From Macrostomum lignano (Eukaryota), in contig NIVC01001466.1 of assembly GCA_002269645.1 (NCBI GenBank), forward strand, positions 1 to 59,381: DNA of 59,381 bases. The letters are read 5' to 3'. The notes under the pieces were generated by a model. That model was not told where the DNA came from, searched no databases, and worked only from the letters and a program-made list of their open reading frames with translations. The position numbers were made by a program, and so were the translations under genes. This document shows positions 6,253-35,670 of the stretch, piece by piece. Position 1 is the first letter of the stretch, and every line of letters begins with the position of its first letter.

Positions 6253-6261
6253 GTGTCTCGG

Positions 6262-6304
<43 letters not shown>

Positions 6305-6306
6305 AG

Positions 6307-6349
<43 letters not shown>

Positions 6350-8313: not shown

Positions 8314-8419
8314 GTGAGTAGATGTGCTTTTTTGGTTGCGTCTGTGTGCCAGTGCGACACTTCATCATTTCCAAAATCATATAAAATTTGTTACTCGATT
8401 GCTAAATTAAATTTCTTTC

Positions 8420-9614: not shown

Positions 9615-9949
9615 GTAAGGGAAACTAGGCTACAAGTCTACGCATCCCGAGCTAGAAGCTCTGTCTCCCCTCTCCCCTCCCCTCTCCCCTCTCTCTCTCC
9701 CCTCTTCCTCTTGAGAAGTTCTGCTCGCCGACTAGAAGCGGCCCTAATGAGTAGGAGGGGGAGGGGGAGTGATGAAGAAGACGAGAAATGCAGAAGCCTA
9801 AAAAAAGCCTTTCCCAAACTCCAAACTCCTCATCCTCCTCCAGCGGCAACCGAGTTTCTCAAGTGTCCCCCATATAGTTTGCTAGCTGTAATAGTTTAAT
9901 ACTATCTCACGCTTCAACTCTTCCTTGCTAGCCTTATCTATACGAAAAT

Positions 9950-10630: not shown

Positions 10631-11149
10631 GGAGTTGTCTTATGCTGTGTATAATAGAATATAAAATAATCCTAATTTCAATTTTGTATAGATTTTTAGG
10701 TGTGTACACAAATTTCTATGCATCAATGTGCGGGAGTTTATATGTATGCAGTATTTATACGAGTATATAATTGTAAGATGGCGTGACTGACCAACTACGC
10801 CCATATCTAGAACTCTATTCTACTTCTCTACTGATCTACTGGTTCTCTACTGATTTGATTAGTTTGTACCTCCTTGCCTCTGCCTAAATCCTGATGTAGT
10901 ATGTTATGTATGTGTGGATGGTTGGATAAACCTGATACGGTTCTTGTTTAGCTGGGGCTGGTGGGCTGACTGCCGCACACACTCCTGATCTATCTATGCT
11001 CCGTTCCGAGGGCTAACACTGCAGATTGAAGTGTTGGAGCAAACTTTTATTATATGTGCATCTACTAAAGTTAGATTCATTTCCAGTGTTGCTCTGCGCA
11101 AGAGGGGATAGAAGAAATTTAGAGTTGCAAAATACATGAAGTGTGACGA

Positions 11150-13979: not shown

Positions 13980-14168
13980 GTCATGTGCCCCGCAAGATTA
14001 TTCAACGTCTCGCAAATCCCACAGCTCTTCAAGAAGCATTCAACTTTTTTGACATCGACCAAGACGGCCGAATCACTAGCGGCGAGCTGCAGAAGGTGCT
14101 GAAATTCCTTGGCTTCAAAACTAACGAGGACGAGGTGAAACTGATGATCGCCGATGTTGATATTGACG
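13980..14168 (+). CDS. Calmodulin-like protein exon (EF-hand 1 and start of EF-hand 2)
   Basis: HVPRKIIQRLANPTALQEAFNFFDIDQDGRITSGELQKVLKFLGFKTNEDEVKLMIADVDIDG; AACAG| acceptor and G|GTGAGG donor. Confidence 0.95.
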
Positions 14169-14214
14169 GTGAGGCATTCAGTTTAGCTGGCTAGATCCAT
14201 TCTATTTTAGTTTA

Positions 14215-15372
14215 CCTCTGATTGGCTAGATTAGCAATCCAGTCTATTCCAATTGATTTGTGATTGGCTAGATTACCAATCCATTCTATTCCAATTGATC
14301 TGTGATTGGCTAGATTTGCAATCCATTCTATTCCAATTGATTTGTGATTGGCTAGATTACCAATCCATTCTATTCCAATTGATCTGTGATTGGCTAGATT
14401 TGCAATCCATTCTATTCCAATTGATTTGTGATTGGCTAGATTAGCAATCCATTCTATTCCAATTGATTTGTGATTGGCTAGATTAGCAATCCATTCTATT
14501 CCAATTGATCTGTGATTGGCTAGATTAGCAATCCATTCTATTCCAATTGATTTGTGATTGGCTAGATTAGCAATCCATTCTATTCCAATTGATTTGTGAT
14601 TGGCTAGATTAGCAATCCATTCTATTCCAATTGATTTGTGATTGGCTAGATTAGCAATCCATTCTATTCCAATTGATTTGTGATTGGCTAGATTAGCAAT
14701 CCATTCTATTCCAATTGATTTGTGATTGGCTAGATTAGCAATCCATTCTATTCCAATTGATTTGTGATTGGCTAGATTAGCAATCCATTCTATTCCAATT
14801 GATCTGTGATTGGCTAGATTAGCAATCCATTCTATTCCAATTGATCTGTGATTGGCTAGATTAGCAATCCATTCTATTCCAATTGATCTGTGATTGGCTA
14901 GATTAGCAATCCATTCTATTCCAATTGATTTGTGATTGGCTAGATTAGCAATTCATTCTATTCCAATTGATTTGTGATTGGCTAGATTAGCAATCCATTC
15001 TATTCCAATTGATTTGTGATTGGCTAGATTAGCAATCCATTCTATTCCAATTGATCTGTGATTGGCTAGATTAGCAATCCATTCTATTCCAATTGATTTG
15101 TGATTGGCTAGATTAGCAATGCATTCTATTACAATTGATCAGTGATTGGCTAGATTAGCAATGCATTCTATTCCAATTGATCAGTGATTGGCTAGATTAG
15201 CAATGCATTCTATTCCAATTGATCAGTGATTGGCTAGATTAGCAATCCATTCTATTCCAATTGATTTGTGATTGGCTAGGTTAGCAATTCATTCTATTCC
15301 AATTGATCTGTGATTGGCTAGATTAGCAATCCATTCTATTCCAATTGATTTGTGATTGGCTAGGTTAGCAAT
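14215..15372 (+). repeat. 42-bp satellite (~27 units) filling a calmodulin-like intron
   Basis: ATTGAT(T/C)TGTGATTGGCTAGATTAGCAATCCATTCTATTCCA; reverse complement of the 19.4-24.6 kb and 27.4-27.7 kb arrays. Confidence 0.97.
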
Positions 15373-15594: not shown

Positions 15595-15742
15595 GCTTTC
15601 GATCACAATGGCGACAATTTTATCGACTTCGCCGAGATTAAGAAGACGATGCACTTCTTAGGCGAGGAGGTCACAGACGAGGACGTCCGGTCGATGATAC
15701 GAGAGGCGGATGTGGACAATGACGGCCGAATCAACTTTGAAG
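15595..15742 (+). CDS. Calmodulin-like protein exon (EF-hands 3 and 4)
   Basis: [49 protein letters not shown]; GACAG| acceptor, G|GTAACT donor. Confidence 0.95.
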
Positions 15743-16328
15743 GTAACTTTGCGTTGCTTGGCTTGTTATTCATGTGTCCAGTATGTTGTTTAAAATACTT
15801 ATTTTACGACAGAAAATGCGCTTCATAATAAATTCCTTTTTATGCCCTTTTTACACTACTTATGTCAGTAGAAAGCTAAGAAGCGAGAAACTTTAATCAA
15901 AAGCATAATTTATAAACAATAATTAAGTAACCACTTTTCTCTAACCAATCCGATATGTTGTGAAAGATACATTTGATCAATATCTCCTTTTAAGCCATTT
16001 TTACACTACTCATGTCAGTAGGAATATAAGAAACGACAACTTTTCTCGAACCAAAGGTTTAATTTTTTTACTATAATTTATTAACCAATTTTCTTAATAA
16101 GCCGATGTGTTGTGAAAAAACTTTGATTCAATTCAAAAAAGCATTTGGTAAATATCTCCTTATTTGCCCTTTTAACACTACTCATGTCAGTAGAAATATA
16201 GGAAACAATAAACTTTAATCGAATGATAATTTAAAATTTTATTAACAATTTAGTTATCAATGTTTCAAATCATCTACTTTTGTCAGTAGAAATATACGAA
16301 TAATAAAATATGTTTTGCTCGCCCGCAG

Positions 16329-18061: not shown

Positions 18062-18995
18062 ACTAGCAATCCACTCTGTTCGATTAGGCTATAGATTAGC
18101 AATCCACTCTGTTCGATTAGGCTATAGATTAGCAATCCACTCTGTTCGATTAGGCTATAGATTAGCAATCCACTCTGTTCGATTAGGCTATAGATTAGCA
18201 ATCCACTCTGTTCGATTAGGCTATAGATTAGCAATCCACTCTGTTCGATTAGGCTATAGATTAGCAATCCACTCTATGTTCAAGTAGGCTATAGATTAGT
18301 AATCCACTCTATATTCAAGTAGGCTATAGATTAGCAATCCACTCTATGTTCAAGTAGGCTATAGATTAGCAATCCACTCTATGTTCAAGTAGGCTATAGA
18401 TTAGCAATCCACTCTATGTTCAAGTAGGCTATAGATTAGCAATCCACTCTATATTCAAGTAGGCTATAGATTAGCAATCCACTCTATATTCAATTAGGCT
18501 ATAGATTAGCAATCCACTCTATGTTCAAGTAGGCTATAGATTAGCAATCCACTCTATGTTCAAGTAGGCTATAGATTAGCAATCCACTCTATGTTCAAGT
18601 AGGCTATAGATTAGCAATCCACTCTATGTTCAAGTAGGCTATAGATTAGCAATCCACTCTATGTTCAAGTAGGCTATAGATTAGCAATCCACTCTATGTT
18701 CAAGTAGGCTATAGATTAGCAATCCACTCTATATTCAAGTAGGCTATAGATTAGCAATCCACTCTATATTCAAGTAGGCTATAGATTAGCATCCACTCTA
18801 TATTCAAGTAGGCTATAGATTAGCATCCACTCTATATTCAAGTAGGCTATAGATTAGCAATCCACTCTATATTCAAGTAGGCTATAGATTAGCAATCCAC
18901 TCTATCCAATTAGACTATGGATTAGCAATCCACTCTATATTCAATTAGGCTATAGATTAGCAATCCACTCTATCTAATTAGGCTATGGATTAGAT
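18062..18995. repeat. 33/35-bp minisatellite related to the 42-bp satellite
   Basis: 33-bp ATTAGCAATCCACTCTGTTCGATTAGGCTATAG changing to 35-bp TTAGCAATCCACTCTATGTTCAAGTAGGCTATAGA; shares GATTAGCAATCCA(C/T)TCT with the 42-mer. Confidence 0.92.
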
Positions 18996-19091: not shown

Positions 19092-19346
19092 CTAGAGTCG
19101 AGCATGAATAACAAACGAGTTTCCGCTCGACCCAGAACTCAGTCCAGTGCCGGATTCATCACACTCCGCCGCCTTCCTCAGCCAGAATCTGGGCCTCTTT
19201 GTCGCCGTTCTTCGCGGCCGCTTCGATGCCACTGGAGCGAAGGCAGCCGCAGACAACAGGTACCAGGCAATTGGCAGAGTCAGCAGCAGCGCTGCCAGGA
19301 AGGCGATGGCACGGAACACTAAAATGTGTGCGCAGTGGGGCAATGT
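19092..19346 (-). CDS. Last exon of the RNF217-like gene (TM helix plus basic tail)
   Basis: GC-rich island reading ILVFRAIAFLAALLLTLPIAWYLLSAAAFAPVASKRPRRTATKRPR; acceptor ATAAG| at 19347. There is a phase conflict with the upstream donor (see findings). Confidence 0.65.
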   Translation of the reverse strand, partial: TLPHCAHILVFRAIAFLAALLLTLPIAWYLLSAAAFAPVASKRPRRTATKRPRFWLRKAAECDESGTGLSSGSSGNSFVIHARL

Positions 19347-19353
19347 CTTATGG

Positions 19354-22300
19354 CTAATCTAGCCAATCACTGATCAGTTAGAATAGAATGGATTGCTAAT
19401 CTAGCCAAATCACAGATCAATCGGAATAGAATGGATTGCTAATCTAGCCAATCACAGATCAATTGGAATAGAATGGATTGCTAATCTAGCCAATCACAAA
19501 TCAATTGGAATAGAATGGATTGCTAATCTAGCCAATCACAGATCAATCGGAATAGAATGGATTGCTAATCTAGCCAATCACAAATCAATTGGAATAGAAT
19601 GGATTGCTAATCTAGCCAATCACAAATCAATTGGAATAGAATGGATTGCTAATCTAGCCAATCACAAATCAATTGGAATAGAATGGATTGCTAATCTAGC
19701 CAATCACAAATCAATTGGAATAGAATGGATTGCTAATCTAGCCAATCACAGATCAATCGGAATAGAATGGATTGCTAATCTAGCCAATCACAGATCAATT
19801 GGAATAGAATGGATTGCTAATCTAGCCAATCACAGATCAATTGGAATAGAATGGATTGCTAATCTAGCCAATCACAAATCAATTGGAATAGAATGGATTG
19901 CTAATCTAGCCAATCACAAATCAATTGGAATAGAACGGATTGCTAATCTAGCCAATCACAGATCAATTGGAATAGAATGGATTGCTAATCAAGCCAAATC
20001 ACAGATCAATCGGAATAGAATGGATTGCTAATCTAGCCAATCACAGATCAATCGGAATAGAATGGATTGCTAATCTAGCCAATCACAGATCAATCGGAAT
20101 AGAATGGATTGCTAATCTAGCCAATCACAAATCAATTGGAATAGAATGGATTGCTAATCTATCCAATCACAAATCAATTGGAATAGAATTGATTGCTAAT
20201 CTAGCCAATCACAAATCAATTGGAATAGAATGGATTGCTAATCTAGCCAATCACAGATCAATTGGAATAGAATGGATTGTTAATCTAGCCAATCACAAAT
20301 CAATTGGTATAGAATGGATTGCTAATCTAGTCAATCACAGATCAATTGGAATAGAATGGATTGCTAATCTAGCCAATCACAGATCAATCGGAATAGAATG
20401 GATTGTTAATCTAGCCAATCACAGATCAATCGGAATAGAATGGATTGCTAATCTAGCCAAATCACAGATCAATCGGAATAGAATGGATTGCTAATCTAGC
20501 AAATCACAAATCAATTGGAATAGAATGGATTGCTAATCTAGCCAATCACAAATCAATTGGAATAGAATGGATTGCTAATCTAGCCAATCACAGATCAATC
20601 GGAATAGAATGGATTGCTAATCTAGCCAATCACAGATCAATTGGAATAGAATGGATTGCTAATCTAGCCAATCACAGATCAATTGGAATAGAATGGATTG
20701 CTAATCTAGCCAATCACAAATCAATTGGAATAGAATGGATTGCTAATCTAGCCAAATCACAGATCAATTGGAATAGAATGGATTGCTAATCTAGCCAATC
20801 ACAGATCAATTGGAATAGAATGGATTGCTAATCTAGCCAATCACTGGTCAATTGGAATAGAATGGATTGCTAATCTAGCCAATCACTGATCAATTGGAAT
20901 AGAATGGATTGCTAATCTAGCCAATCACAGATCAATTGGAATAGAATGGATTGCTAATCTAGCCAATCACAGATCAATTGGAATAGAATGGATTGCTAAT
21001 CTAGCCAGTCACAGATCAATCGGAATAGAATGAATTGCTAATCTAGCCAATCACAGATCAATCGGAATAGAATGGATTGCTAATCTAGCCAATCACAGAT
21101 CAATCGGAATAGAATGGATTGCTAATCTAGCCAATCACAAATCAATTGGAATAGAATGGATTGCTAATCTATCCAATCACAAATCAATTGGAATAGAATT
21201 GATTGCTAATCTAGCCAATCACAAATCAATTGGAATAGAATAGATTGCTAATCTAACCAATCACAAATCAATTGGAATAGAATGGATTGCTAATCTAGCC
21301 AATCACAGATCAATTGGAATAGAATGGATTGTTAATCTAGCCAATCACAAATCAATTGGTATAGAATGGATTGCTAATCTAGTCAATCACAGATCAATTG
21401 GAATAGAATGGATTGCTAATCTAGCCAATCACAGATCAATCGGAATAGAATGGATTGTTAATCTAGCCAATCACAGATCAATCGGAATAGAATGGATTGC
21501 TAATCTAGCCAAATCACAGATCAATCGGAATAGAATGGATTGCTAATCTAGCAAATCACAAATCAATTGGAATAGAATGGATTGCTAATCTAGCCAATCA
21601 CAAATCAATTGGAATAGAATGGATTGCTAATCTAGCCAATCACAGATCAATCGGAATAGAATGGATTGCTAATCTAGCCAATCACAGATCAATTGAAATA
21701 GAATGGATTGCTAATCTAGCCAATCACAGATCAATTGGAATAGAATGGATTGCTAATCTAGCCAATCACAGATCAATTGGAATAGAATGGATTGCTAATC
21801 TAGCCAATCACAAATCAATTGGAATAGAATGGATTGCTAATCTAGCCAATCACAGATCAATCGGAATAGAATGGATTGCTAATCTAGCCAAATCACAGAT
21901 CAATCGGAATAGAATGGATTGCTAATCTAGCCAAATCACAGATCAATCGGAATAGAATGGATTGCTAATCTAGCCAATCACAGATCAATCGGAATAGAAT
22001 GGATTGCTAATCTAGCCAAATCACAGATCAATCGAATAGAATGGATTGCTAATCTAGCCAAATCACAGATCAATCGGAATAGAATGGATTGCTAATCTAG
22101 CAAATCACAAATCAATCGGTATAGAATGGATTGCTAATCTAGCCAATCACAAATCAATTGGAATAGAATTGATTGCTAATCTAGCCAATCACAGATCAAT
22201 CGGAATAGAATGGATTGCTAATCTAGCCAAATCACAGATCAATCGGTATAGAATGGATTGCTAATCTAGCCAATCACAGATCAATTGGAATAGAATGGAT

Positions 22301-24577
22301 TGCTAATCTAGCCAATCACAGATCAATTGGAATAGAATGGATTGCTAATCTAGCCAATCACAAATCAATTGGAATAGAATGGATTGCTAATCTAGCCAAT
22401 CACAGATCAATTGGAATAGAATGGATTGCTAATCTAGCCAATCACAGATCAATTGGAATAGAATGGATTGCTAATCTAGCCAATCACAGATCAATTGGAA
22501 TAGAATGGATTGCTAATCTAGCCAATCACAGATCAATTGGAATAGAATGGATTGCTAATCTAGCCAATCACAAATCAATTGGAATAGAATGGATTGCTAA
22601 TCTAGCCAATCACAGATCAATCGGAATAGAATGGATTGCTAATCTAGCCAATCACAGATCAATTGGAATAGAATGGATTGCTAATCTAGCCAATCACAAA
22701 TCAATTGGAATAGAATGGATTGCTAATCTAGCCAATCACAGATCAATTGGAATAGAATGGATTGCTAATCTAGCCAATCACTGGTCAATTGGAATAGAAT
22801 GGATTGCTAATCTAGCCAATCACTGATCAATTGGAATAGAATGGATTGCTAATCTAGCCAATCACAGATCAATTGGAATAGAATGGATTGCTAATCTAGC
22901 CAATCACAGATCAATTGGAATAGAATGGATTGCTAATCTAGCCAGTCACAGATCAATCGGAATAGAATGAATTGCTAATCTAGCCAATCACAGATCAATC
23001 GGAATAGAATGGATTGCTAATCTAGCCAATCACAGATCAATCGGAATAGAATGGATTGCTAATCTAGCCAATCACAAATCAATTGGAATAGAATGGATTG
23101 CTAATCTATCCAATCACAAATCAATTGGAATAGAATTGATTGCTAATCTAGCCAATCACAAATCAATTGGAATAGAATAGATTGCTAATCTAACCAATCA
23201 CAAATCAATTGGAATAGAATGGATTGCTAATCTAGCCAATCACAGATCAATTGGAATAGAATGGATTGTTAATCTAGCCAATCACAAATCAATTGGTATA
23301 GAATGGATTGCTAATCTAGTCAATCACAGATCAATTGGAATAGAATGGATTGCTAATCTAGCCAATCACAGATCAATCGGAATAGAATGGATTGTTAATC
23401 TAGCCAATCACAGATCAATCGGAATAGAATGGATTGCTAATCTAGCCAAATCACAGATCAATCGGAATAGAATGGATTGCTAATCTAGCAAATCACAAAT
23501 CAATTGGAATAGAATGGATTGCTAATCTAGCCAATCACAAATCAATTGGAATAGAATGGATTGCTAATCTAGCCAATCACAGATCAATCGGAATAGAATG
23601 GATTGCTAATCTAGCCAATCACAGATCAATTGAAATAGAATGGATTGCTAATCTAGCCAATCACAGATCAATTGGAATAGAATGGATTGCTAATCTAGCC
23701 AATCACAGATCAATTGGAATAGAATGGATTGCTAATCTAGCCAATCACAGATCAATTGGAATAGAATGGATTGCTAATCTAGCCAATCACAGATCAATCG
23801 GAATAGAATGGATTGCTAATCTAGCCAAATCACAGATCAATCGGAATAGAATGGATTGCTAATCTAGCCAAATCACAGATCAATCGGAATAGAATGGATT
23901 GCTAATCTAGCCAATCACAAATCAATTGGAATAGAATGGATTGCTAATCTAGCCAATCACAAATCAATTGGAATAGAATTGATTGCTAATCTAGCCAATC
24001 ACAGATCAATCGGAATAGAATGGATTGCTAATCTAGCCAAATCACAGATCAATCGGTATAGAATGGATTGCTAATCTAGCCAATTACAGATCAATTGGAA
24101 TAGAATGGATTGCTAATCTAGCCAATCACAGATCAATTGGAATAGAATGGATTGCTAATCTAGCCAATCACAAATCAATTGGAATAGAATGGATTGCTAA
24201 TCTAGCCAATCACAGATCAATTGGAATAGAATGGATTGCTAATCTAGCCAATCACAGATCAATTGGAATAGAATGGATTGCTAATCTAGCCAATCACAGA
24301 TCAATTGGAATAGAATGGATTGCTAATCTAGCCAATCACAGATCAATTGGAATAGAATGGATTGCTAATCTAGCCAATCACAAATCAATTGGAATAGAAT
24401 GGATTGCTAATCTAGCCAATCACAGATCAATTGGAATAGAATGGATTGCTAATCTAGCCAATCACAGATCAATCGGAATAGAATGGATTGCTAATCTAGC
24501 CAATCACAGATCAATCGGAATAGAATGGATTGCTAATCTAGCCAATCACAAATCAATCGGAATAGAATGGATTGCTA
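19354..24577 (-). repeat. 42-bp satellite (~124 units) forming essentially the whole intron
   Basis: CTAATCTAGCCAATCACA(G/A)ATCAAT(T/C)GGAATAGAATGGATTG on +; begins within ~10 nt of both splice sites. Confidence 0.98.
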
Positions 24578-24584
24578 GTCTCAC

Positions 24585-26331
24585 TCAGCAGTAGCCCGCG
24601 CACCATGCGCCGTCCGGCGGGGCACCCTGGCCAGAGGTTTTTCTCGCAGCCGAACACGCTGAACCGGCCAGCGTGGGTGCCCAGAGTCCAGTCCGTCAGC
24701 TTCGAGTACAGGCAGCAGGCTCCACCGCCGCAGCTTCCTCGAAGATCAACTCCGCAGTCTGCGCAGACTTCGATTCCGCAGTTGCGGCAATGCAGCTGGT
24801 TTTGAACGCCCTCGTGGCTTGTCGGGCCTTGGCAGCGCGGGCACCTTGGCTGTCCGTCCGCCGTCTGCTGCTGCTCCTCTTCTTCTGGAATCGCCTCGGC
24901 AGCAGCAGCAGCAGCCTCCGCCTCGTCAGGGACAACTGCTGGCGTCTGTTTGATGTTTTTTGATGTTCGCCGCCAGCTAGTTCGATTTGGCGGCTTCGTG
25001 GCAGCTGGCTTGTCGTTGTCTTTGACTCCCTGTTCGACCTCTTTGGTGTCGCCGCCGCTGCCTGTTGAGCTGCCCGTTGAACGCATCCGGGTTTTTCGCC
25101 AGGAGGTGCGCTTTGATTGGGACTTGTCCGCCGCCTTCTCATTAGGATTCTCATCTGCCGCCGCCTTCTCATCGGGATTCTTATTCGCAGTTGTCTTCTC
25201 ATCGGAATTCTCATCCGCATTTGTCTTCTCATCAGGATTCTCATCCGCCGCCGTCTTCTCATCGAGATTCTCATCCGCAATTGTCCTCTCATCGGGATTC
25301 TCATCCGCAGTTGTCGTCTCATCGGGATTCTCATCCGCAGTTGTCTTCTCATCGAGATTCTCATCCGCCGCCGTCTTCTCATCGAGATTCTCATCCGCAA
25401 TTGTCCTCTCATCGAGATTCTCATCCGCCGCCGTCGTCTCATCGGGATTCTCATCCGCCGCCGTCGTCTCATCGAGTTTCTCATCCGCAATTGTCTTCTC
25501 ATCGGGATTCTCATCCGCCGCCGTCTTCTCATCGAGATTCTCATCCGCATTTGCCTTCTCATCGGTCTTCTCATCGGAATTCTCATTCTCAATTTTCTCG
25601 TCTTGATTATTATCTGTTTTCTCACCATTAGTCTTCTCATCCGTCTTCTCATCTTCGGCTTCTTCAGCGATGTACATCGACATTGATTGGTCTTCGATGG
25701 CAGCTGCAGCTCCAGACTCAGACGTCTGTTCTCGAGCTCTTTTCGAAGCTCGCCTCCAACCGGCTTTCACGGCAGCCTTTTTGTCCCCGCCCTGCTGCTG
25801 CTGCTCCTCTTTTGACTCATCCGCTTTTGTCGACGTCGGTTGATTGCGCGCTTTCTTTGATGCGCGGCGCCAATTCGACTTAGCGCCAGGCGGCCCCGGT
25901 GGCGCCGGCTCCTCAGAGTCGATCTCCTCAGCCACGGCGTCGGATCTCAGTGAGTTGGTCGACGTCGCGCTGATCCGCTTTGAAGCTCGACGCCAACCAG
26001 CTCGACCAGCGCTGGCCTTCTCATCCGCCTTCTCAGTAGTCTTGTCTGCCGAAGAGTTTGCTGACATCGAAGTTAAATCTCGAACTTTTTTGGAGGTTCT
26101 TCGCCAATGTATCTTGGATTCCGACTTGTCATCGGCGGAACTATTAGTGACTCCGCCTACCACGGATTCTACCAGATCTTCAGCCTCCTTTGTTATACTG
26201 ACGTCTTCCATTTGTTTATCTACGGCGGCAGATTCGAGCGTCTTTGTCTCAGTCTTTGTTGTCGCTTTCTTAGAAGCCCGTCGCCACTGGGACTTGGCCG
26301 ACGGTGTCTCGGGTTGGGCTGCTGTCGACAT
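24585..26331 (-). CDS. Large exon of an RNF217-like (RBR-derived) protein: WRRASK repeats, acidic 10-aa repeats, degenerate RING2
   Basis: Open ~580 codons from ATG 26331 (acceptor after a (CT)n tract at 26335) to donor A|GTGAGA at 24584. C-terminal CPRC-x14-CRNC-x4-CADC...GTHAGRFSVFGCEKNLWPGCPAGRRMVRG resembles the RNF217 RING2 and post-RING2 segment as I recall it (GDH..LSIFGC....P.RP..RRLVRG). Confidence 0.8.
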
Positions 26332-26689
26332 TGACTGAGAGACAGAGAGAGAGAGAGAGAGAGATAATAGGATTCTGAGCTCGGGTCTTGCTGTCACGCA
26401 ACAAGCACGCAGACGTCTCGGAGACTCCGCCCAGTTTTTAAGGCCAGATCAGGCCTGGAAGCCACTCCCTTGGGCATTGTATGGTCACAATTTGAGACTT
26501 TTAGCTGCCTTTGACATTCGATTTGCTGTGCCCCAGACCATTGGCTGGGATTTATTATGAAAAAAACGGATAAAAAATAATGATGGAATTTCAACTGGTT
26601 TATTTCGTGTGCAGTTGACATGGTTGTCTGATTTCGAATTTGAGATTTTTGCTGCCTGGATTTTTGGGGTGAGATTAGTGAGAGTGACA

Positions 26690-27035
26690 TCAATGAGGAT
26701 TGACATTAGTGAGAGTGATACTAGTGAGGGTGATAATAGTGAGAGTGGTATTAGTGAGAGTGGTATTAGTGAGAGTGACATTAGTGAGGGTGACATTAGT
26801 GAGAGTGACATTAGTGAGAGTGACATTAGTAAGAGTGACATTAGTGAGAGTGGTATTAGTGAGAGTGACATTAGTGAGAGTGACATTAGTGAGAGTGACA
26901 TTAGTGAGAGTGACATTAGTAAGAGTGACATTAGTGAGAGTGGTATTAGTGAGAGTGACATTAGTGAGAGTGGTATTAGTGAGAGTGACATTAGTGAGAG
27001 TGGTATTAGTGAGAGTGATATTAGTGAGAGTTGTG
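26690..27035. repeat. 15-bp minisatellite (GAGAGTGACATTAGT)
   Basis: Direct reading. Confidence 0.95.
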
Positions 27036-27407
27036 AGACTGAAATTAGGGAGCATTGAATGAGCTCAGACTGGCTCAAATACCGCACACCCTGAAACTGG
27101 GTGAGTTCGCCTTTCCCCTCTGTCCATGCACGGGGGTGAAACTGGCCAGGTGCATGCTTCTCTCAGTCAAAAGGGCGTTGTCAGAAAGGCATTTCCATCT
27201 CCTTTTTTGGGTCTGCAAGGGGACTTGCAGCCACAGACGCTTCCACGCCCTGTTCTGTAACGACTGGGCAGGGCAAGGCGGAATGCTAGGGTACAGGTCA
27301 AAAATATTATTAATAATAGTATTTATATAACTAAAGAATACTTCTGTAAGCCTAATGTTTATTTTTGCGTGACAGATTAATTTCTACCAAATAGTAAAAT
27401 GTTTTGC

Positions 27408-27728
27408 TAATCTAGCCAATCACAATTCAATTGGAATAGAATGGATTGCTAATCTAGCCAATCACAGATCAATTGGAGTTGAATGTTTTGCTAATCTAGC
27501 CAATCACAGATCAATTGGAATAGAATGGATTGCTAATCTAGCCAATCACAGATCAATTGGAGTTGAATGGATTGCTAATCTAGCCAATCACAGATCAACT
27601 GGAGTTGAATGGATTGCTAATCTAGCCAATCACAGATCAACTGGAGTTGAATGGATTGCTAATCTAGCCAATCACAGATCAACTGGAGTTGAATGGATTG
27701 CTAATCTAGCCAATCACGAATCAACTGG
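27408..27728 (-). repeat. Third array of the 42-bp satellite (~7-8 units)
   Basis: Same unit and orientation as 19354-24577. Confidence 0.95.
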
Positions 27729-28988: not shown

Positions 28989-30010
28989 TTACGATACGAT
29001 ACTAGCTATACAGCGACGAGGGTCATTCTGCAGCAGTAGCAGATCCCCGTCGTTTCCGTCCCCAGGTGCAACTTCAATTGCCGCGTCTCCGCCGGCTGCA
29101 TCAGCTTCTTCATTAAAGGAGACAATGAAATTCCGCAGAAGGGAGCAACACTTGACGATCTCGTACGCTGGATCGACGCGCAGTTTACCGGAGAGGCATG
29201 CGAAGCGCTGCTTCAAAATTCCAAAGAAACATTCCGCAAGTCTTCGTGTCTTTGCGTGCACAACGTTGAATTTAGACAGCCTCTGTGAGATTTGCACCAC
29301 TTATTGGAGTGAAGAGCCATTCCTTCAGTCCATAGCTACTGTCTCCGAGGAGAATGGCGTTTGGAAAGGGGCGCCAGCCACCGTCAAATGCGACGCATAA
29401 TGAGCTATTATTCAGCACGCGCTTGTCATTCAGGCGTCCGGGCCATCGCGCAGACAAATAGAAGGCCTGGTTGTTAAGGCCTGCGACTACCATGCAGTTT
29501 CTGGAGTGATTTCCATGCCTGTCCAAGTACTGATCCTCATCGGTTGTTGGAGCAACAATCTGAATGAGTGTTCCGGCAACGCTCGGCATTCCACCAATTC
29601 GATAAATGTCTAACGCAACTTGAATTATTTGTTGATTGGTGACTGGCCAGCGAACAAGCCGGTCAAAAAGCTGTTCGTTTAAGGCCGATACAACTCGTCG
29701 AACAGTTCTACAGATTGTAGCCTTCGAAACTCCGTGTGCGTCTCCAACGACGAAATAGAAGCTACCACAAGCCAGAAATCTTAAAGTGCTCAAAAGTTGC
29801 TCTTGAGCTGTAAGGGCTTTGTTCCTGAGCGTACCATGTTCAATCACCGGACCGATAGTTTGTAAGAGTCTCCACCTGATCCATTCGGAGACGGAAGCGT
29901 TCGGAAAAGTAAAGGCCTTGAGGCTGAAAGTTGATTCGTTCTTTAAAAACTCTTTGCGCAGGTCCTAGAGCCACTAGGAGCTCTAATTCTTCGTCTTCGC
30001 TATCGGACAT
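28989..30010 (-). pseudogene. Harbinger (HARBI1-like) transposase, disrupted
   Basis: Three ORF pieces: LSTLRFLACGSF..VGDAHGVSKATICR, ARWPGRLNDKRV, LLGDSSYGL, RRLAECFFGILKQRFACL. Two frameshifts; SVAGTLIQI lacks the canonical (A/C)IDG. Confidence 0.92.
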
Positions 30011-31257
30011 GAAAAGATAAAACATAAGAAAACGATTTGATAAAAGCTACAAGTGTCACAGCGACTTGTCAAAAACACATGACAAGAAAGTACTTTCACA
30101 CAGAAGCATCCAGCTTTGTGCATGTCTATGGATGAAAACCCCGAAGAAACGCTTGTAATTTGTCAAATTTCGCTTGTCACTTGTCACTTGTAACTTGTCG
30201 ATTTGTCAAGTTGTAGCTGTTTTTTATGAAACGCATTATTTTGAGGAATTGTCATTTGTCACTTGTAATTTGTCCGATAAGTGCTTTATAAAATAGGCCC
30301 CTGCGGAAACTTCTCCATAAGCAATTTATTCATCATTATTTTATTCTTTACGCTCAGTCGTGCTACTGCAATGCAAGCATCAGAATGTCGTTTTGAGTCA
30401 AAAAAGATGCCAAAGAAGCTAATTTTATCCTTTACTGTCGTGCAGGCCTGTTTTCGGAAATTTTACCAGTTGTTCAAGATTTGAAAAATGGCATATAGCT
30501 ATGGCTATATTTAAGAGAAATAAATATCCAGTTCACCGGGTTTATTGTAGCTGTAATATGTAGCTGCTGACGGACAATCAAGAGGCTAATTGGAGATAAT
30601 TTCAGCGTCCTTCAATCAAATTGGGAGGCTGAAGCGATTATGTAGCTTGTCTACCACCACAACCATAGACACAATCTATCATTGTCTGCCTCTAAAACCA
30701 TAGACACAATCTATCATTGTCTACCACCACAACCATAGACACAATCTATCATTGTCTACCACCACAACCATAGACACAATCTATCATTGTCTGCCTCCAA
30801 AACCATAGACACAATCTACCATTGTCTGCCTCCAAAACCATAGACACAATCTATCATTGTCTGCCTCCAAAACCATAGACACAATCTATCATTGTCTGCC
30901 TCCAAAACCATAGACACAATCTACCATTGTCTGCCTCCAAAACCATAGACACAATCTATCATTGTCTACCACCACAACCATAGACACAATCTACCATTGT
31001 CTGCCTCTAAAACCATAGACACAATCGACAGGGACAACTAAAACCCTCGGGACGCGAAACGAGCCAATTCATGGCAAAAAATCTGAGGGGCTCGCTTAAA
31101 AGTATTGTTCTATGGCTTTTTCAAGTCTTCTCTGCTATCAGGCATTAACGGTTAGATTAAATAGTAAAGCGAGGAAATGTCGAGTATTTAATTTAAAGAA
31201 TAGGAACCAGTGATATAATTACAATGTATCTACAATAAAGTAACCGCCATATCAACA

Positions 31258-31690
31258 AAAAAACTCCAACGGCAAGAAGATAAAGGATGAAAGCGAAGAT
31301 GAAACTCCAACGGCAAGAAGATAAAGGATGAAAGCGAAGATGAAACTCCAACGGCAAGAAGATAAAGGATGAAAGCGAAGATGAAACTCCAACGGCAAGA
31401 AGATAAAGGATGAAAGCGAAGATGAAACTCCAACGGCAAGAAGATAAAGGATGAAAGCGAAGATGAAACTCCAACGGCAAGAAGATAAAGGATGAAAGCG
31501 AAGATGAAACTCCAACGGCAAGAAGATAAAGGATGAAAGCGAAGATAAACTCCAACGGCAAGAAGATAAAGGATGAAAGCGAAGATGAAACTCCAACGGC
31601 AAGAAGATAAAGGATGAAAGCGAAGATGAAACTCCAACGGCAAGAAGATAAAGGATGAAAGCGAAGATGAAACTCCAACGGCAAGGAGAT
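31258..31690. repeat. 41-bp minisatellite inside the P-type element
   Basis: AACTCCAACGGCAAGAAGATAAAGGATGAAAGCGAAGATGA x ~10. Confidence 0.95.
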
Positions 31691-31732
31691 AGAAGCAAAT
31701 ACGGAACTCCAAGGACAAGACGACACAAACAG

Positions 31733-33027
31733 TCAGTAGCTCGTACATAAAGGAACCTGGTCCGGATCGTCGACGGCTCGACCCAGAAGGTGACGGCATC
31801 GATATCGAACGGACGGTTGTATGTACATTTCGTCAAACATAATTACGCAGTTTCGCTGAGCTCCTGATAGACTAGCAAAAACTGACTGGATCACATCGGC
31901 TGCGTCGGTTTCTGTGCCAACTTCTCCTGTAACTGCTAGTTGCAGCTGCAGCGTTCGGGGATGAGGCAATGGCAATAGCTTCCGTAGGTAAGAGTAAGCC
32001 GAACTACTGATCAAGTAGAGCAATGCTGACTGTCGCACTAGTGAAATGTCATAGTGGCGATTGTTCCGATTTACTAATGTAAGGCTAAGTTGTCGAATCA
32101 AAAACTGAAGCGACGGATCCAAATCAGAGTCAGAATCTATATCATCACTGATTCTACTAACAAACGCTTCGACTTCACGTTGGGGATTGGCGTCGGAATT
32201 TTTGCACCGCACGACAACAGCATCCAGTTGCGACCAGCGCTTGAGTGTCGGTTGAAATCCCAACAAGTCTCGAACCAAAATCGGTGTATGCAGTTTGAAT
32301 GCACGAATCAGAAAGTTGGGTGAGACAGAAATTCGAACAGACAGGTCTCCATCTTTATCTAACGTAAACAAGTAAACGTCTTCGTTCAGAATAGCTGTGT
32401 TCAGTGCATGTCGAGATACGACATCCGAATTTTTCACCTCAGCTCGAAAACTTTCCCATGCCGGCAAAAATCAAGCAACTGAAAAGCGTCCATCTCATCG
32501 ATGTCGCCGCACCTCGCGTCAGAAAGAACACCGCGCTTTTCGGCCTGTCGGTCCTGGTCTAAAATAAGAGTAAAAATAAAAGTAAGATAATTGTGAGCGG
32601 CAAAATCGATATAGACGCTAAGTGTTGAGCAATCTTTAAGTTACGTACCTTGGTTCTGAACAAAACACGAGCTAGGAACTCTATTGAAAACAGAAGGAGG
32701 ATTAATTGGCCTTTCGGTAGAGTTTTTCTTGACCATTGGAGCATCGCTTGGCCAATGGTTTACGCACACGCCCATATTGTCAGTCACTCTCTAAAATAAA
32801 AAATTTTGGGTTTCAAGTTGTTTGGACGAGACTGGCATGCAGAATTGAAGCGGAATTATGCAACAGTAATGACAGCAAATAATCTGGTTTCTTACCTGGA
32901 GAATATTTGACAGCGCCTTTCTCCATCGCTCTCGCTCCTGAGGATCTCTGGGAAACGCGAATGTCCGTGTTCGAACGGCTTCAGAGTTATTTGACGAGCA
33001 CGGAAATACGCTGCACTTTCTTGGCAT
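31733..33027 (-). pseudogene. THAP-domain P-type transposase, frameshifted and 3'-truncated
   Basis: Exons 33027-32896 (MPRKCSVFPC...FAFPRDPQERERW) and 32790-32649 (VCVNHWP...PPSVF) form a THAP C2CH domain; downstream AYSYLRKLLPLPHPRTL and CVIMFDEMYIQPSVRY are P/THAP9-type motifs. The ORF ends soon after. Confidence 0.88.
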
Positions 33028-34737
33028 TTCATCAAGTGAATAAAAAATGCTTCTCTTGATATAGTTCAGCTTAGCTTCACTGCTGGCCGCAGCTAAAGCA
33101 ATTTTAATTTGCCTGATAGCAGAGAAGACTTGAAAAAGCCATAGAACAATACTTTTAAGCGAGCCCCTCAGATTTTTTGCCATGAATTGGCTCGTTTCGC
33201 GTCCCGAGGGTTTTAGTTGTCCCTGCACAATCGACCATTGTCTACCTCCAAAACCATAGACACAATCTACCATTGTCTGCCTCCAAAACCATAGACACAA
33301 TCTATCATTGTCTGCCTCCAAAACCATAGACACAATCTACCATTGTCTGCCTCCAAAACCATAGACACAATCTACCATTGTCTGCCTCCAAAACCATAGA
33401 CACAATCTACCATTGTCTGCCTCCAAAACCATAGACACAATCTACCATTGTCTGCCTCCAAAACCATAGACACAATCTACCATTGTCTGCCTCCAAAACC
33501 ATAGACACAATCTACCATTGTCTGCCTCCAAAACCATAGACACAATCTACCATTGTCTGCCTCCAAAACCATAGACACAATCTATCATTGTCTGCCTCCA
33601 AAACCATAGACACAATCTACTATTATTTACAAGGCTCGGGGATTGAGTCAGTTCATTGATTGTTTATTTCGATTTATTATTCAGTTTTATTAGCTTCATA
33701 ACTCACTAAATGTTGTTGAAAAACTTTAACCATTTGCTAGCTACGTATACCCTTAGCCCCCAGTCAGCTAAGTCCATCGCGTGCTGTAACTACACTTTTT
33801 GCTAACTTTTTTGCTTTCCCCTTTAAACCATGACCTGCAACTCACTCCCAATTGCATGCTTCTTCAATCGATTAATAAAATAATGCACGTTTTAGAGGGT
33901 TTCTTGCGAGAGAAAGAGCCGCGCCTTTTTTAGTAAGTTCGGAAGTTTTACCCGACTCAACTAAGTTTTTGTTCGTCACAGCTTTGAGTGTAATTAAAAG
34001 AAAATAATTCTACTGACGAGAAGCTTTTCTGTGGAAAAGAATAGAATCTTTGTCGCTGTTCAATAAATGGAGGTAGAGAGGCGTCTACTTGTGCAGTAGG
34101 ATCTTAGAGTATTAGGGGGGAACAACTAGAGCATTTATTAGGATACATTGCATACGTGTAGGATGCAATACATGTACAGAAGATAGAGATCTCATTTTTG
34201 TGAAGATTTAATAGCTAAATCATGATAGAACACAGCTAGATTAGCTACATCTAAATTAATTAGAGGTTACCGGTAGATTGTGACGACCAGCACATGTAGC
34301 TTAAGCATGCGACAAATATGTACGTGCGTTCTTGGACTGTCTTGAACTTACTTCTAAGAAAAATGGGGTGCAGCATCCTTCAACTCTAGTTGTCCATTGC
34401 TTATACGTAAACAAGGCAATGTGAAAATATGGTTTCTAAGGTAAGGAAAGGAAAAAGAAAAAATTGATAAAGATGATGCATGATATTGTTGAATTTTATT
34501 TTCCGGGATTGCCTATCTTGTATAAAGTTTTTGAATGTTCGTCCATGGGACCACACGTGCATCACACCATAGAACCCCCAGGAGCCCCAAAAAACCTGCT
34601 AAAAATACTACAATTGCCATGGACATTGTGATTGGATCATAAACAACTGCACTAGTGCAAGTGGGGCATACCTGCACAATTCAAAATGTCTTGCAGCAGG
34701 TCATGGTATTAATAGAACTCTTGTTACTACAGGTAGC

Positions 34738-35192
34738 TCACGTCAGCATGAGAATCTCCAGCTGCTTAAAGCTGTAGTACCAGCCGTCTGTAACGTTGCT
34801 TGGAGCATTACTAGCCCACACGATGCCCTTGGCCCTGTCTGCAGCTGATACATTCAGCGCGTATGGGTAGTTGAAGTACCGACCGAAAGGTCCACTACAG
34901 TGGCAGCACTTGTGCCAGTGAGGCAAGAAGACAACGGCACAATTAGCCGCGCAGTCACTCCATCCGCGGTCTCGGGTCATAAACTGCATATTAAAAGGGC
35001 CAAATAGGCAGTTTCCAAGACCTCCACCAGGCACAAAGGTGTAAGCAGACAGCGTATAGTTTGTACTTTCAGCCAGAATGTGAATGTTGACGTAGTAGGC
35101 GTAAATGTAAGTGTCGTCCCAGTACAGCAGGTCAACGCGGAACCGGTTGTTACTGGGCTGAGCGCTGGTCCTGGTGTGCAGCCACTCCAGGC
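34738..35192 (-). CDS. PAN-PAN-fibrinogen-domain protein, exon 4 (FReD)
   Basis: GLEWLH..T...RFRVDLLYWD...AYY..I..ES.NYTL...MQFMTRDR...CA...GIVW...YSFKQLEILMLT-stop; TTGCCAG| acceptor in phase 1. Confidence 0.9.
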
Positions 35193-35670
35193 CTGGCAAA
35201 GAAAATAATGTGCTACATGCTGGATTGCATTTGCTGGCTAAATAAGCTCACGCCAAAAAAAGACACATCGTAAGAAAAGTCCAAATTAAGAAAGACACAT
35301 TGCAAACAAGTTCACATCGCTAAAGGCACTTCGTCAAAGACATCCAAGACGCATCGTCAAAGACACATCGGCAAAGACACACACAGGCAAAGACACATAA
35401 TCCAAGACACATCGTCAAAGACACATCGGCAAAGACACACACAGGCAAAGACACATAATCCAAGACGCATCGTCAAAGACACATTGTCAATCAAGTCCAC
35501 ATCGGCAAAGGCAGAGCTAGCATTTTACTAGCTCGAAGCTTCAAAAGCATGAAATTTCACATCATTGAACAGTCTTGACATTCATGCACTCCCGCCAGCT
35601 AAAAACTTGAAGTTGGATACTTTTGAGCTTGAGAAAATATTAAACTTGTGAAACATTTAGTGTGACTAAC

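What the first reader, a model, noticed from the sequence alone, without database searches (positions are those of the whole stretch)
24585..24843. RNF217-like protein with a catalytically dead RING2 and no RING1/IBR in the window
Seen: CPRC-QGPTSHEGVQNQLH-CRNC-GIEV-CADC keeps the zinc-ligand spacing of RBR RING2 (CPxC-x14-CxxC-x4-CxxC) but has no Cys or His where the catalytic GCxH(M) motif lies. The following GTHAGRFSVFGC...P..RRMVRG and the TM segment match the RNF217 C-terminus as I recall it. The ~490 residues upstream in the same exon contain no Cys-rich RING1 or IBR, only repeats. Established: RBR ligases need RING1 for E2 binding and the RING2 Cys for thioester transfer. Inference: a membrane-anchored pseudo-ligase, scaffold or decoy derived from RNF217.
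Basis: partly seen in the sequence, partly recalled or inferred. Interest (0 to 1): 0.75.

Follow-up and report, generated by a model that had tools for sequence, protein, structure and literature searches.

The report
Catalytically dead, membrane-anchored RNF217 RING2 relative
An animal gene (probably from a mollusc) keeps only the last zinc finger, juxtamembrane tail and membrane anchor of the ubiquitin ligase RNF217, has lost the finger's active-site cysteine and has no E2-binding domains in the window, so it most likely encodes a non-enzymatic "pseudo-ligase"; this is a modestly interesting lineage-specific variant, not a new kind of system.

Summary
On the minus strand, 24843-24585 encodes CPRC-x14-CRNC-x4-CADC followed by LGTHAGRFSVFGC...RRMVRG. 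It ends exactly at a phase-1 GT donor.

A 5.27-kb intron made almost wholly of a 42-bp satellite leads to a last exon (19318-19092). That exon encodes a 34-residue hydrophobic anchor and a basic cluster.

- **Homology.** Among 1.84 billion representative proteins, the only real hit is the RING2, tail and start of the anchor of an RNF217 orthologue (E 9.9e-5). About 48 RNF217 proteins hit only this spot in the window (best 8e-12). A profile comparison gives 98.6% probability (E 8.6e-16).
- **What is kept.** All eight inferred zinc ligands and the RNF217-specific tail.
- **What is lost.** The catalytic loop matches 0 of 14 consensus residues, with Gln at the catalytic Cys column. Elsewhere 16 of 19 highly conserved columns are kept (p = 1.8e-4).
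- **RING1 and IBR.** Neither exists anywhere in the 59-kb window. The 495 residues upstream in the same exon contain no Cys.
- **Coding status.** The exon is really coding. Seven WRR[AT]SK motifs are conserved through different synonymous codons.

The FYVE reading is rejected. No orthologue, transcript or species name was found, so function is inferred. I class it as a new variant of a known kind, of moderate interest.

The parts
24585..26331 (-). Large coding exon A, from ATG (MSTAAQ...) to the phase-1 donor CTGCTGA|GTGAGA. It encodes 582 codons plus one base.
   Evidence: ORF found and spliced model built. The chance that the 427 non-repeat codons stay open is about 1.4e-7. A (CT)n-cag just 5' of the ATG could be an acceptor, so the true 5' end is undefined.
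24844..26331 (-). Cys-free, low-hydrophobicity N-terminal arm of 495 aa, probably disordered. It carries seven WRR[AT]SK-type motifs at 26269-26286, 26089-26106, 25978-25995, 25855-25872, 25741-25758, 25084-25101 (degenerate) and 24958-24975.
   Evidence: All 7 Trp lie in the motif. The motif copies use different synonymous codons. No homologue of this region was found.
25130..25591 (-). About 15 tandem acidic decapeptide repeats (ADEN[LP]DEKTA), built on 30-bp and 90-bp DNA periods.
   Evidence: TRF output and listing of the repeat units.
24646..24843 (-). RING2 (Rcat)-derived zinc finger: CPRC-x14-CRNC-x4-CADC...H...C. All eight inferred zinc ligands are kept.
   Evidence: Alignment A1, BLASTP at 55.8 bits and hhalign. 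The AF2 model has pLDDT of about 80-85 over the first three knuckles, and its best Foldseek hits are RBR RING2 and IBR domains.
24790..24831 (-). Remnant of the catalytic loop, QGPTSHEGVQNQLH, against the consensus KIYIQRSSGCDHMT. Gln at 24802-24804 occupies the catalytic Cys column.
   Evidence: 0 of 14 consensus matches in the loop, against 16 of 19 elsewhere at columns conserved at 90% or more; Fisher p = 1.8e-4. The column is anchored to the ARIH2 GGCNHM motif.
24595..24684 (-). RNF217-specific post-RING2 tail: LGTHAGRFSVFGCEKNLWPGCPAGRRMVRG.
   Evidence: The invariant H, G, C, R, R and G columns are kept. Its 21-residue insertion ends in S.L..(W/Y)TLG(T/S)H and is matched only by the 20-residue insertions of P0001 and the gastropod protein P0047.
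19319..24584 (-). Intron of 5,266 nt. Positions 19353-24581 are a 42-bp satellite of 124 copies. The acceptor is cacattttag|TG.
   Evidence: The donor phase (1) matches the frame of the downstream ORF.
19092..19318 (-). Last coding exon B. It encodes the hydrophobic anchor (with LLL from exon A: LLLMFRAIAFLAALLLTLPIAWYLLSAAAFAPVA; the exon B part is 19227-19316), then the basic cluster KRPRRTATKRPRFWLRK, a 30-aa tail and the TAG stop at 19092-19094.
   Evidence: This is the only stretch with Kyte-Doolittle hydropathy above 1.6. hhalign extends through it, and the conserved L and P columns are kept.

Best explanation
**What it is.** This is a real protein-coding gene whose 3' part descends from an RNF217-type RBR ubiquitin ligase of the mollusc-like subtype. 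Only three parts of the ligase survive: the RING2 (Rcat) zinc scaffold, the RNF217-specific juxtamembrane tail and the C-terminal hydrophobic anchor.

**What is gone.** The active-site loop has been completely rewritten, with Cys replaced by Gln. RING1 and IBR are absent from the exon and from the whole window. In their place the finger is fused in frame to a new, Cys-free, probably disordered arm of 495 residues. That arm carries seven Kemptide-like WRR[AT]SK motifs and about 15 acidic decapeptide repeats.

**What follows for chemistry.**
- Shown: it has no catalytic Cys in the RING2 loop.
- Shown, within the window: it has no RING1.
- It follows from the established RBR mechanism that, as encoded here, it cannot recruit E2~Ub or form the E3~Ub thioester.

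**Most likely mode of action (inferred).** It acts as a non-enzymatic, membrane-anchored pseudo-ligase. It would sit in the same membrane environment as RNF217, through the conserved anchor and tail. There it would either associate with RNF217 or compete with it for whatever binds the RING2 and tail surface. The N-terminal arm would serve as a docking platform, possibly switched by basophilic-kinase phosphorylation of its RRxS sites.

**How sure.** Descent from RNF217 and loss of the catalytic residues: about 0.9. A functional gene and not a relic: about 0.7. The specific regulatory mechanism: about 0.3. The confidence given for this explanation (0.6) is for 'a real gene encoding a non-catalytic RNF217-derived membrane protein'.
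For: **Homology**
- The exhaustive phmmer search finds one real hit in 1.84e9 proteins. It is the RING2 and tail of an RBR protein, and every named relative of that protein is called RNF217.
- BLASTP gives 55.8 bits and 32% identity over 87 aa with a single gap.
- About 48 RNF217 proteins hit only 24846-24586.
- hhalign gives 98.6% probability, E 8.6e-16, over 104 columns including the anchor.

**Selective loss of catalysis**
- 0 of 14 loop residues match the consensus, against 16 of 19 highly conserved columns kept elsewhere; p = 1.8e-4.
- All eight inferred zinc ligands are kept.
- The column holding the catalytic Cys is anchored to ARIH2, ARIH1, parkin and HOIL-1 RING2.

**Fold**
- The AF2 model's best PDB matches are parkin, HOIL-1, RNF216 and HOIP RING2 or IBR domains, plus the EMI1 and EMI2 zinc-binding regions.

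**A real gene**
- The 427 non-repeat codons stay open with chance probability of about 1e-7.
- The seven motif copies are conserved at the amino-acid level but use different synonymous codons.
- The splice phase joins the finger exon in frame to an anchor exon in the same order as in RNF217.

**No RING1 or IBR**
-.

**Mechanism background**
- RBR ligases need RING1 for E2 binding and the RING2 Cys for transthiolation (PMC7458406).
- The related RNF144A is regulated by self-association through its TM domain (Ho et al. 2015, cited in PMC7458406).
Against: - No orthologue, paralogue or transcript of this gene was found in any collection. Conservation across species and expression are therefore untested.
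- Pfam IBR_1 and IBR scores fall below their gathering thresholds: 22.4 against 27 and 18.6 against 24.3.
- The AF2 model is only moderately confident (mean pLDDT 69) and was built from an RNF217 alignment. The Foldseek E-values are weak, 0.05-0.1.
- The 5' end is undefined. A (CT)n-cag acceptor-like site precedes the ATG, so upstream coding exons outside the window cannot be excluded.
- The locus is embedded in satellites and transposon remains, a setting where gene fragments are often non-functional.
- The proposed interaction with RNF217 and the phospho-regulation have no direct support.
Confidence: 0.6

Rival explanations
1. The locus is a decaying partial duplicate. In this reading the 3' end of RNF217 was copied into a repeat-rich region and is a non-functional relic that happens to be joined to a low-complexity ORF.
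For: - The surroundings are rich in satellites and transposons.
- No orthologue or transcript was found.
- The catalytic residues are lost.
- The finger region alone (87 codons) would stay open by chance about 10% of the time.
Against: - At only about 32% identity to the nearest RNF217, the segment has no stop or frameshift, and it needs just one 1-residue gap.
- 16 of 19 highly conserved non-loop columns are kept, including every zinc ligand, while the loop matches 0 of 14. That is a non-uniform pattern, not neutral decay.
- The 427 non-repeat codons of the exon are open with chance probability of about 1e-7.
- The motif copies show synonymous divergence with amino-acid conservation.
- The splice phase into the anchor exon is preserved.
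Confidence: 0.15
2. It is the 3' part of a larger, complete RBR gene whose RING1-IBR exons lie upstream beyond the window. The protein would then bind E2 but carry an aberrant RING2.
For: - An acceptor-like (CT)n-cag lies directly 5' of the ATG, and the frame stays open for 22 codons upstream.
- From my own knowledge, RNF217 genes can be large.
Against: - There is no RING1 or IBR signal in the 33 kb upstream or anywhere else in the window.
- Any such exons would be separated from the finger by 495 Cys-free residues. In RNF217 the IBR-to-RING2 spacer is about 35 residues and lies in the same exon as CPKCK.
- Similarity to RNF217 starts only about 3 residues before CPRC.
- Even with RING1-IBR attached, the catalytic Cys would still be missing.
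Confidence: 0.07
3. It is still an enzyme with a relocated nucleophile. One of the extra cysteines (SCGGGACC in the insertion, or PGCP in the tail) would take over thioester formation, or the finger would use another acceptor chemistry.
For: Four cysteines absent from the RNF217 consensus lie in flexible stretches next to the zinc scaffold. The AF2 model shows low pLDDT for model residues 44-53, which cover that insertion.
Against: - There is no RING1 to bring in E2~Ub.
- The whole ubiquitin-handling loop, including the His of the C-x-H motif, is erased.
- I know of no precedent for this.
Confidence: 0.03
4. It is an unrelated zinc finger of FYVE, rabphilin or B-box type that only resembles RING2 through its CxxC spacing.
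For: Pfam reports FYVE at 16.3 bits and B-box at 12.2 bits over the same residues. HCRNCG..VC..C is reminiscent of the FYVE core.
Against: - Both scores are below threshold and below IBR_1 and IBR.
- No FYVE protein appears in the exhaustive search, the PDB sequence search or the fold search.
- Similarity to RNF217 continues for about 55 residues past the finger into the RNF217-specific tail and anchor.
Confidence: 0.01

Closest known systems
RNF217 (IBRDC1/OSTL), a membrane-anchored RBR E3 ubiquitin ligase. The closest sequences are the mollusc-type orthologues P0001 (Logan SRR3401909 transcript) and P0047 (Babylonia areolata RNF217-like).
   Same: - The RING2 zinc-ligand spacing.
- The tail G-x-H-x4-S-x2-G-C...R-R-x-x-R-G.
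- A C-terminal hydrophobic anchor followed by a basic cluster.
- An insertion of about 20 residues before TLG(T/S)H, found only in P0001 and P0047.
- An intron three residues after the RG motif, where vertebrate isoforms also diverge.
   Different: - No RING1 and no IBR.
- The catalytic loop IQRxxGC[DN]HM is replaced by TSHEGVQNQL.
- The ancient intron after CPKCK is absent.
- The N-terminal 495 residues are unrelated to any RNF217 N-terminus.
EMI1 (FBXO5) and EMI2 zinc-binding regions: non-catalytic IBR/RING2-fold domains that inhibit the APC/C ligase (PDB 2m6n and 2rt9; PMC4141206).
   Same: They are IBR/RING2-fold zinc modules used without a catalytic Cys and outside an RBR triad. Both appear among the fold matches of the model, at ranks 6 and 16. 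They are a precedent for this fold working as a regulator of ubiquitylation rather than as an enzyme.
   Different: There is no sequence relationship, no F-box, D-box or RL tail, and they are not membrane proteins. The resemblance is structural and weak (Foldseek E 0.09-0.27).
RNF144A and RNF144B, the minimal RBR ligases with a C-terminal TM domain.
   Same: RING2 is followed by a C-terminal membrane anchor. The TM domain of RNF144A mediates self-association that controls its activity (Ho et al. 2015, cited in PMC7458406). This is the model for how an anchor-bearing dead copy could interfere with its parent.
   Different: These are complete, active RBR ligases. No RNF144-type protein was recovered in any search with this sequence, and the tail motif here is the RNF217 one.

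Membership tests
RBR E3 ubiquitin ligases (functional class) | RING1 domain that binds the E2 | tested here: not met
   The 495 residues upstream in the same exon contain no Cys. tblastn with 69 proteins and a RING1-IBR HMM find nothing in six frames of the 59-kb window; the best E is 1.1. Exons outside the window cannot be tested.
RBR E3 ubiquitin ligases (functional class) | IBR domain between RING1 and RING2 | tested here: not met
   The same searches apply. The finger matches the RING2 of P0001 at 55.8 bits but its IBR at only 22.7 bits.
RBR E3 ubiquitin ligases (functional class) | Catalytic Cys in the RING2 loop (G-C-x-H-M) | tested here: not met
   Gln (24802-24804) occupies the column. 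The loop matches the consensus at 0 of 14 positions. The column is anchored to the ARIH2 GGCNHM motif.
RBR E3 ubiquitin ligases (functional class) | RING2/IBR-type two-zinc scaffold | tested here: met
   C-x2-C-x14-C-x2-C-x4-C-x2-C plus the conserved H and C are all present. The AF2 model's top PDB matches are RING2 and IBR domains. Zinc binding itself was not measured.
RBR E3 ubiquitin ligases (functional class) | Pfam IBR or IBR_1 gathering score | tested here: not met
   IBR_1 scores 22.4 bits against a cut-off of 27, and IBR scores 18.6 against 24.3. These are nevertheless the best-scoring families.
RNF217 subfamily (descent) | Closest relatives are RNF217 proteins | tested here: met
   The only genuine hit among 1.84e9 representatives is P0001. 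All named relatives of P0001 are called RNF217. hhalign against an RNF217 C-terminal profile gives 98.6%.
RNF217 subfamily (descent) | Post-RING2 tail G-x-H-x4-S-x2-G-C ... R-R-x-x-R-G | tested here: met
   The H, G, C, R, R and G columns, invariant across RNF217 proteins, are all kept.
RNF217 subfamily (descent) | C-terminal hydrophobic anchor followed by a basic cluster | tested here: met
   Exon B encodes it in the correct phase. Kyte-Doolittle hydropathy is above 1.6 only at residues 576-613. This depends on a predicted splice, not an observed one.
RNF217 subfamily (descent) | Gene structure: intron directly after CPKCK, and intron after RRxxRG+3 | tested here: inconclusive
   The first intron is inferred from read-through and alternative isoforms in molluscs and cetaceans. 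It is absent here. The second coincides with the point where the beluga and herring isoforms diverge, but its phase in those genes is unknown.
FYVE / rabphilin-type zinc fingers | Pfam FYVE gathering score and the WxxD, R(R/K)HHCR and RVC motifs | tested here: not met
   FYVE scores 16.3 bits against a cut-off of 27.8 and covers only half the profile. The basic RRHH patch and the RVC motif are absent from the sequence. No FYVE hit appears.

The most novel reading that the evidence does not exclude
A functional 'RING2-only' pseudo-RBR. In this reading a membrane-anchored, catalytically inert Rcat module retains RNF217's anchor and tail. It acts as a phospho-switchable antagonist or adaptor of RNF217, or of its substrates or ubiquitin, through seven RRxS motifs on a disordered arm. 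That would make it the first described pseudoenzyme offshoot of the RBR ligase family that regulates its parent ligase.
Probability: 0.2. Interest if true: 0.55.

Novelty: new variant of a known kind. Interest (0 to 1): 0.4.

Why it matters
Pseudoenzymes that regulate their active relatives are well known for kinases, phosphatases, deubiquitinases, E2s (the UEV proteins) and RING partners. This statement rests on my own knowledge. My literature searches turned up no described RBR-derived protein that keeps only a Cys-less RING2.

If the gene is expressed, it would help in two ways:
- It would show which parts of RNF217 matter independently of catalysis, namely the zinc scaffold, the G-x-H...RRxxRG tail and the anchor.
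- It would give a natural dominant-negative-like tool for studying RNF217. RNF217 is a poorly understood ligase linked to ferroportin turnover in mammals (PMC8295296).

The significance is limited. It is a single locus from an unidentified invertebrate, with no evidence yet of expression or conservation.

Tried and rejected
1. Word-indexed homology search with the spliced 175-aa C-terminus found nothing at E <= 0.01.
2. The same search with the N-terminal 245 aa found nothing. The arm is an orphan, and the species could not be identified this way.
3. phmmer of the finger against PDB sequences gave no RBR hit. The top hit is a designed Kelch-like repeat protein matched through a 27-aa repeat, which I judge spurious.
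4. The second hit of the exhaustive search (P0002) is a repetitive, Cys-poor protein matched over 34 residues in four stretches. I rejected it as a compositional match.
5. Exact-sequence look-up of the unspliced ORF is not on record.
6. A weak tblastn hit of a RING1 region at 51899-51645 (E 0.012) lacks the Cys pattern and is not recovered by the RING1-IBR HMM, so I rejected it. Weak hits at 28140-28018 and 34680-34543 were rejected as chance.
7. blastn of the P0001 transcript against the window showed no nucleotide similarity, so they are not the same or a very close species.
8. A literature search for the satellite sequence found no paper.
9. Cluster look-up for P0001 and P0003 returned no names.
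10. The FYVE and B-box readings were rejected, as set out under the rival explanations.
Full report
**1. What is at the coordinates**

The finding lies on the minus strand. A 614-codon ORF (26397-24553) ends with ...QPRCPRCQGPTSHEGVQNQLHCRNCGIEVCADCGVDLRGSCGGGACCLYSKLTDWTLGTHAGRFSVFGCEKNLWPGCPAGRRMVRGLLLSETSNPFYSD*. Position 24843 is the first base of the first Cys codon. Position 24585 is the last base before a GTGAGA donor, CTGCTGA|GTGAGA, in phase 1.

The last 11 codons of the raw ORF run into a 42-bp satellite (19353-24581, 124 copies, 96% matches). Directly beyond the satellite there is an acceptor, cacattttag|TG. The ORF that follows it is in frame with the phase-1 donor. It encodes (M)FRAIAFLAALLLTLPIAWYLLSAAAFAPVASKRPRRTATKRPRFWLRK...ARL*.

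The spliced product is 657 aa:
- exon A, 26331-24585
- intron, 24584-19319
- exon B, 19318-19092

The only strongly hydrophobic stretch is at residues 576-613. No transcript is available, so the splice is predicted and not observed.

**2. Is it RNF217-like?**

Pfam gives only sub-threshold hits over the finger:
- IBR_1, 22.4 bits (cut-off 27)
- IBR, 18.6 bits
- FYVE, 16.3 bits
- B-box, 12.2 bits

A word-indexed search with the spliced C-terminus and a sequence search of the PDB found nothing useful.

The exhaustive phmmer search of 1.84 billion representative proteins returned two hits. One is spurious. The other is P0001 (E 9.9e-5), and its residues 579-665 align to residues 6-93 of the query. 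P0001 is a 709-aa protein from a transcript assembly. It has RING1, IBR, RING2 and a C-terminal anchor. Its RBR part retrieves 67 proteins, and every one that carries a name is called RNF217, from horseshoe crab, starfish, spider, gastropod, fishes and mammals.

Further comparisons:
- Pairwise BLASTP of our C-terminus against P0001 gives 55.8 bits and 32% identity over 87 aa with one single-residue gap. The IBR of the same protein scores only 22.7 bits.
- tblastn of all retrieved proteins against the window shows that about 48 RNF217 proteins hit one place only, 24846-24586, with their RING2 plus tail. The best E is 8e-12.
- hhalign of our segment against a 14-sequence RNF217 C-terminal profile gives probability 98.6% and E 8.6e-16 over 104 columns, running through the hydrophobic anchor.
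- The RNF217 profile in turn hits the RING2 domains of ARIH2, ARIH1, HOIL-1, CUL9 and parkin in the PDB. This anchors the column of the catalytic Cys, GGC*NHM.

Descent from an RNF217 RING2, tail and anchor module is therefore established by test, not by recollection.

**3. Dead RING2**

The alignment shows what is kept:
- C-x2-C, C-x2-C and C-x2-C, plus the invariant His and Cys of the tail. That makes eight potential zinc ligands; assigning the last two as ligands is my inference.
- G after the third knuckle.
- G-x-H, S-x-x-G-C, and R-R-x-x-R-G.
- The conserved Leu and Pro of the anchor.

The 14 residues between the first and second knuckle read QGPTSHEGVQNQLH. The consensus there is KIYIQRSSGCDHMT. 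None of the 14 matches, and the catalytic Cys column holds Gln (24802-24804).

At columns conserved at 90% or more, the loop keeps 0 of 7. The rest of the finger and tail keeps 16 of 19 (Fisher p = 1.8e-4). This pattern points to relaxed constraint on catalysis with continued constraint on the fold and tail. It does not look like uniform decay.

An AlphaFold2 model built with an RNF217 alignment has mean pLDDT 69, with about 80-85 over the first three knuckles and below 50 in the Cys/Gly-rich insertion. Its best Foldseek matches in the PDB are RING2 or IBR domains of parkin, HOIL-1, RNF216 and HOIP, plus the EMI1 and EMI2 zinc-binding regions. The E-values are weak (0.05-0.3), and the model is not independent of the alignment. 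I count this as consistent, not decisive.

**4. No RING1 or IBR**

- The 495 residues before CPRC contain no Cys and no Phe. They are rich in A, E, D, T and K.
- A scan for Cys-rich open segments, tblastn, and a 201-position HMM built from the RING1-IBR regions of 54 RNF217 proteins all find nothing in any frame of the 59,381-bp window. The best HMM hit has E 1.1 at 6 bits. The RING2-tail HMM finds only our exon, at E 3e-9.
- Similarity to RNF217 begins about three residues before CPRC.
- In RNF217 proteins the IBR lies about 35 residues upstream of CPKCK. An intron follows CPKCK directly, as shown by read-through and alternative isoforms in molluscs and cetaceans. That intron is absent here.
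- By contrast, our intron three residues after RRMVRG falls where the beluga and herring isoforms diverge, at GSVC|. This suggests that part of the ancestral gene structure survives.

What remains open is the 5' end. A (CT)n tract followed by cag sits directly before the ATG and could be an acceptor. Upstream exons outside the window cannot be excluded.

**5. Is it a gene or a relic?**

- The non-repeat part of exon A (427 codons) would stay open by chance with probability of about 1.4e-7.
- All seven Trp residues of the N-terminal arm lie in a motif [KR]-x-x-x-W-R-R-[AT]-S-K-[KR] (one copy is degenerate). The copies use different synonymous codons. Arg is encoded by CGA, CGG, AGA, CGT, CGC and AGG. 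Ser is encoded by TCT, TCC, TCA and TCG. This indicates conservation at the protein level.
- The finger and tail have diverged to about 32% identity without any stop or frameshift.

These points favour a functional gene. Against this, no orthologue, paralogue or transcript was found in any collection, and the locus sits among satellites and transposon remains.

**6. Likely origin and host**

The insertion between CxxCG and TLGTH is 21 residues in ours and 20 in the relatives. It ends in S.L..(W/Y)TLG(T/S)H and is seen only in P0001 and the gastropod Babylonia areolata protein P0047. Together with the Fibrinogen_C, EF-hand and LRR exons in the window, this suggests a mollusc or other lophotrochozoan. 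This is an inference. The species was not identified, and there was no nucleotide similarity to the P0001 transcript.

**7. Mechanism**

Established knowledge: RBR ligases bind E2~Ub through RING1 and take ubiquitin onto the RING2 Cys (PMC7458406).

Shown here: there is no such Cys, and there is no RING1 in the window. The protein as encoded here cannot be an RBR ligase.

Inferred: it is a membrane-anchored pseudo-ligase. The conserved anchor and tail would place it where RNF217 sits, so it could associate or compete with RNF217. Two precedents support this kind of role:
- RNF144A activity depends on TM-mediated self-association (Ho et al. 2015, cited in PMC7458406).
- The EMI1 and EMI2 zinc-binding regions show that an IBR/RING2 fold can act as a non-catalytic regulator of ubiquitylation (PMC4141206).

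The N-terminal arm carries seven Kemptide-like RRxS sites separated by acidic repeats. It looks like a phospho-regulated docking or membrane-interacting arm, but this is speculation.

If the intron is retained, the product would end in ...SETSNPFYSD and would lack the anchor.

**8. Verdict**

- Novelty: a new variant of a known kind, namely a pseudoenzyme derivative of an RBR ligase.
- Interest is moderate at 0.4. The case is clean and well supported, but it is a single orphan locus without expression or conservation data.

Noticed in passing
window 19353-24581; also 27404-27728 and, inverted, about 14253-14444: One 42-bp satellite (GCTAATCTAGCCAATCACAGATCAATTGGAATAGAATGGATT) carries a CCAAT-box-like AGCCAATCA. 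It fills the gene's 5.3-kb intron to within about 4 nt of the donor and about 35 nt of the acceptor. It recurs upstream of the gene and, in inverted orientation, between the two EF-hand exons (13985-14194 and 15649-15828).
   Followed up: partly
window 18064-18993: A 35-bp satellite (27 copies) starts about 100 nt after the gene's stop codon. The last exon is therefore a unique island of about 340 nt between two satellite arrays. The adjacency of exons A and B depends on correct assembly across these arrays.
   Followed up: no
window 24958-26286 (seven sites, minus strand): Seven WRR[AT]SK motifs contain every Trp of the N-terminal arm. They are encoded with different synonymous codons and resemble the PKA substrate Kemptide (LRRASLG). 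No homologue of this region exists in the searched collections.
   Followed up: partly
window 24700-24740 (minus strand), residues SCGGGACC; also PGCP at about 24610-24625: There are four extra cysteines not found in the RNF217 consensus. They lie in a low-confidence, Gly-rich insertion and in the juxtamembrane tail. Their role is unknown; alternative ligands, lipidation and redox are possibilities.
   Followed up: no
window 29272-29847, 31733-32467 and 32791-33333 (minus strand): Transposon remains lie upstream of the gene: a Harbinger-type DDE_Tnp_4 transposase fragment (E 4.6e-14), and a P-element/THAP9-like HTH followed by a weak THAP domain.
   Followed up: partly
window 13985-14194 and 15649-15828 (plus strand): Two exons of an EF-hand, calmodulin-like gene (Pfam EF-hand_7, E 1.9e-10 and 6e-6).
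   Followed up: partly
window 34738-35199 (minus strand) and 58295-59306 (minus strand): A Fibrinogen_C domain exon (E 1.5e-9), and the 3' part of an LRR-LRRCT gene with a C-terminal TM segment. Both are typical of invertebrate immune-type gene families.
   Followed up: partly
window about 41500-47900: About 6.4 kb of microsatellite-like repeat that reads (SIYL)n in two frames. G+C is 0.28 and GC skew falls to -0.97. Many other satellite arrays occur across the window, at 2594-3715, 4349-5005, 5521-6465, 8245-8937, 9882-10709, 26669-27031, 31193-31836, 37397-37921, 40308-41188 and 55672-56322.
   Followed up: no
related proteins P0033, P0035, P0037, P0044, P0049, P0055-P0068: Many predicted RNF217 proteins from molluscs, other invertebrates and cetacean isoforms end or diverge right after CPKCK. 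This points to an ancient intron that splits the first zinc knuckle of RING2 from the catalytic loop. That intron is missing in the window's gene.
   Followed up: partly
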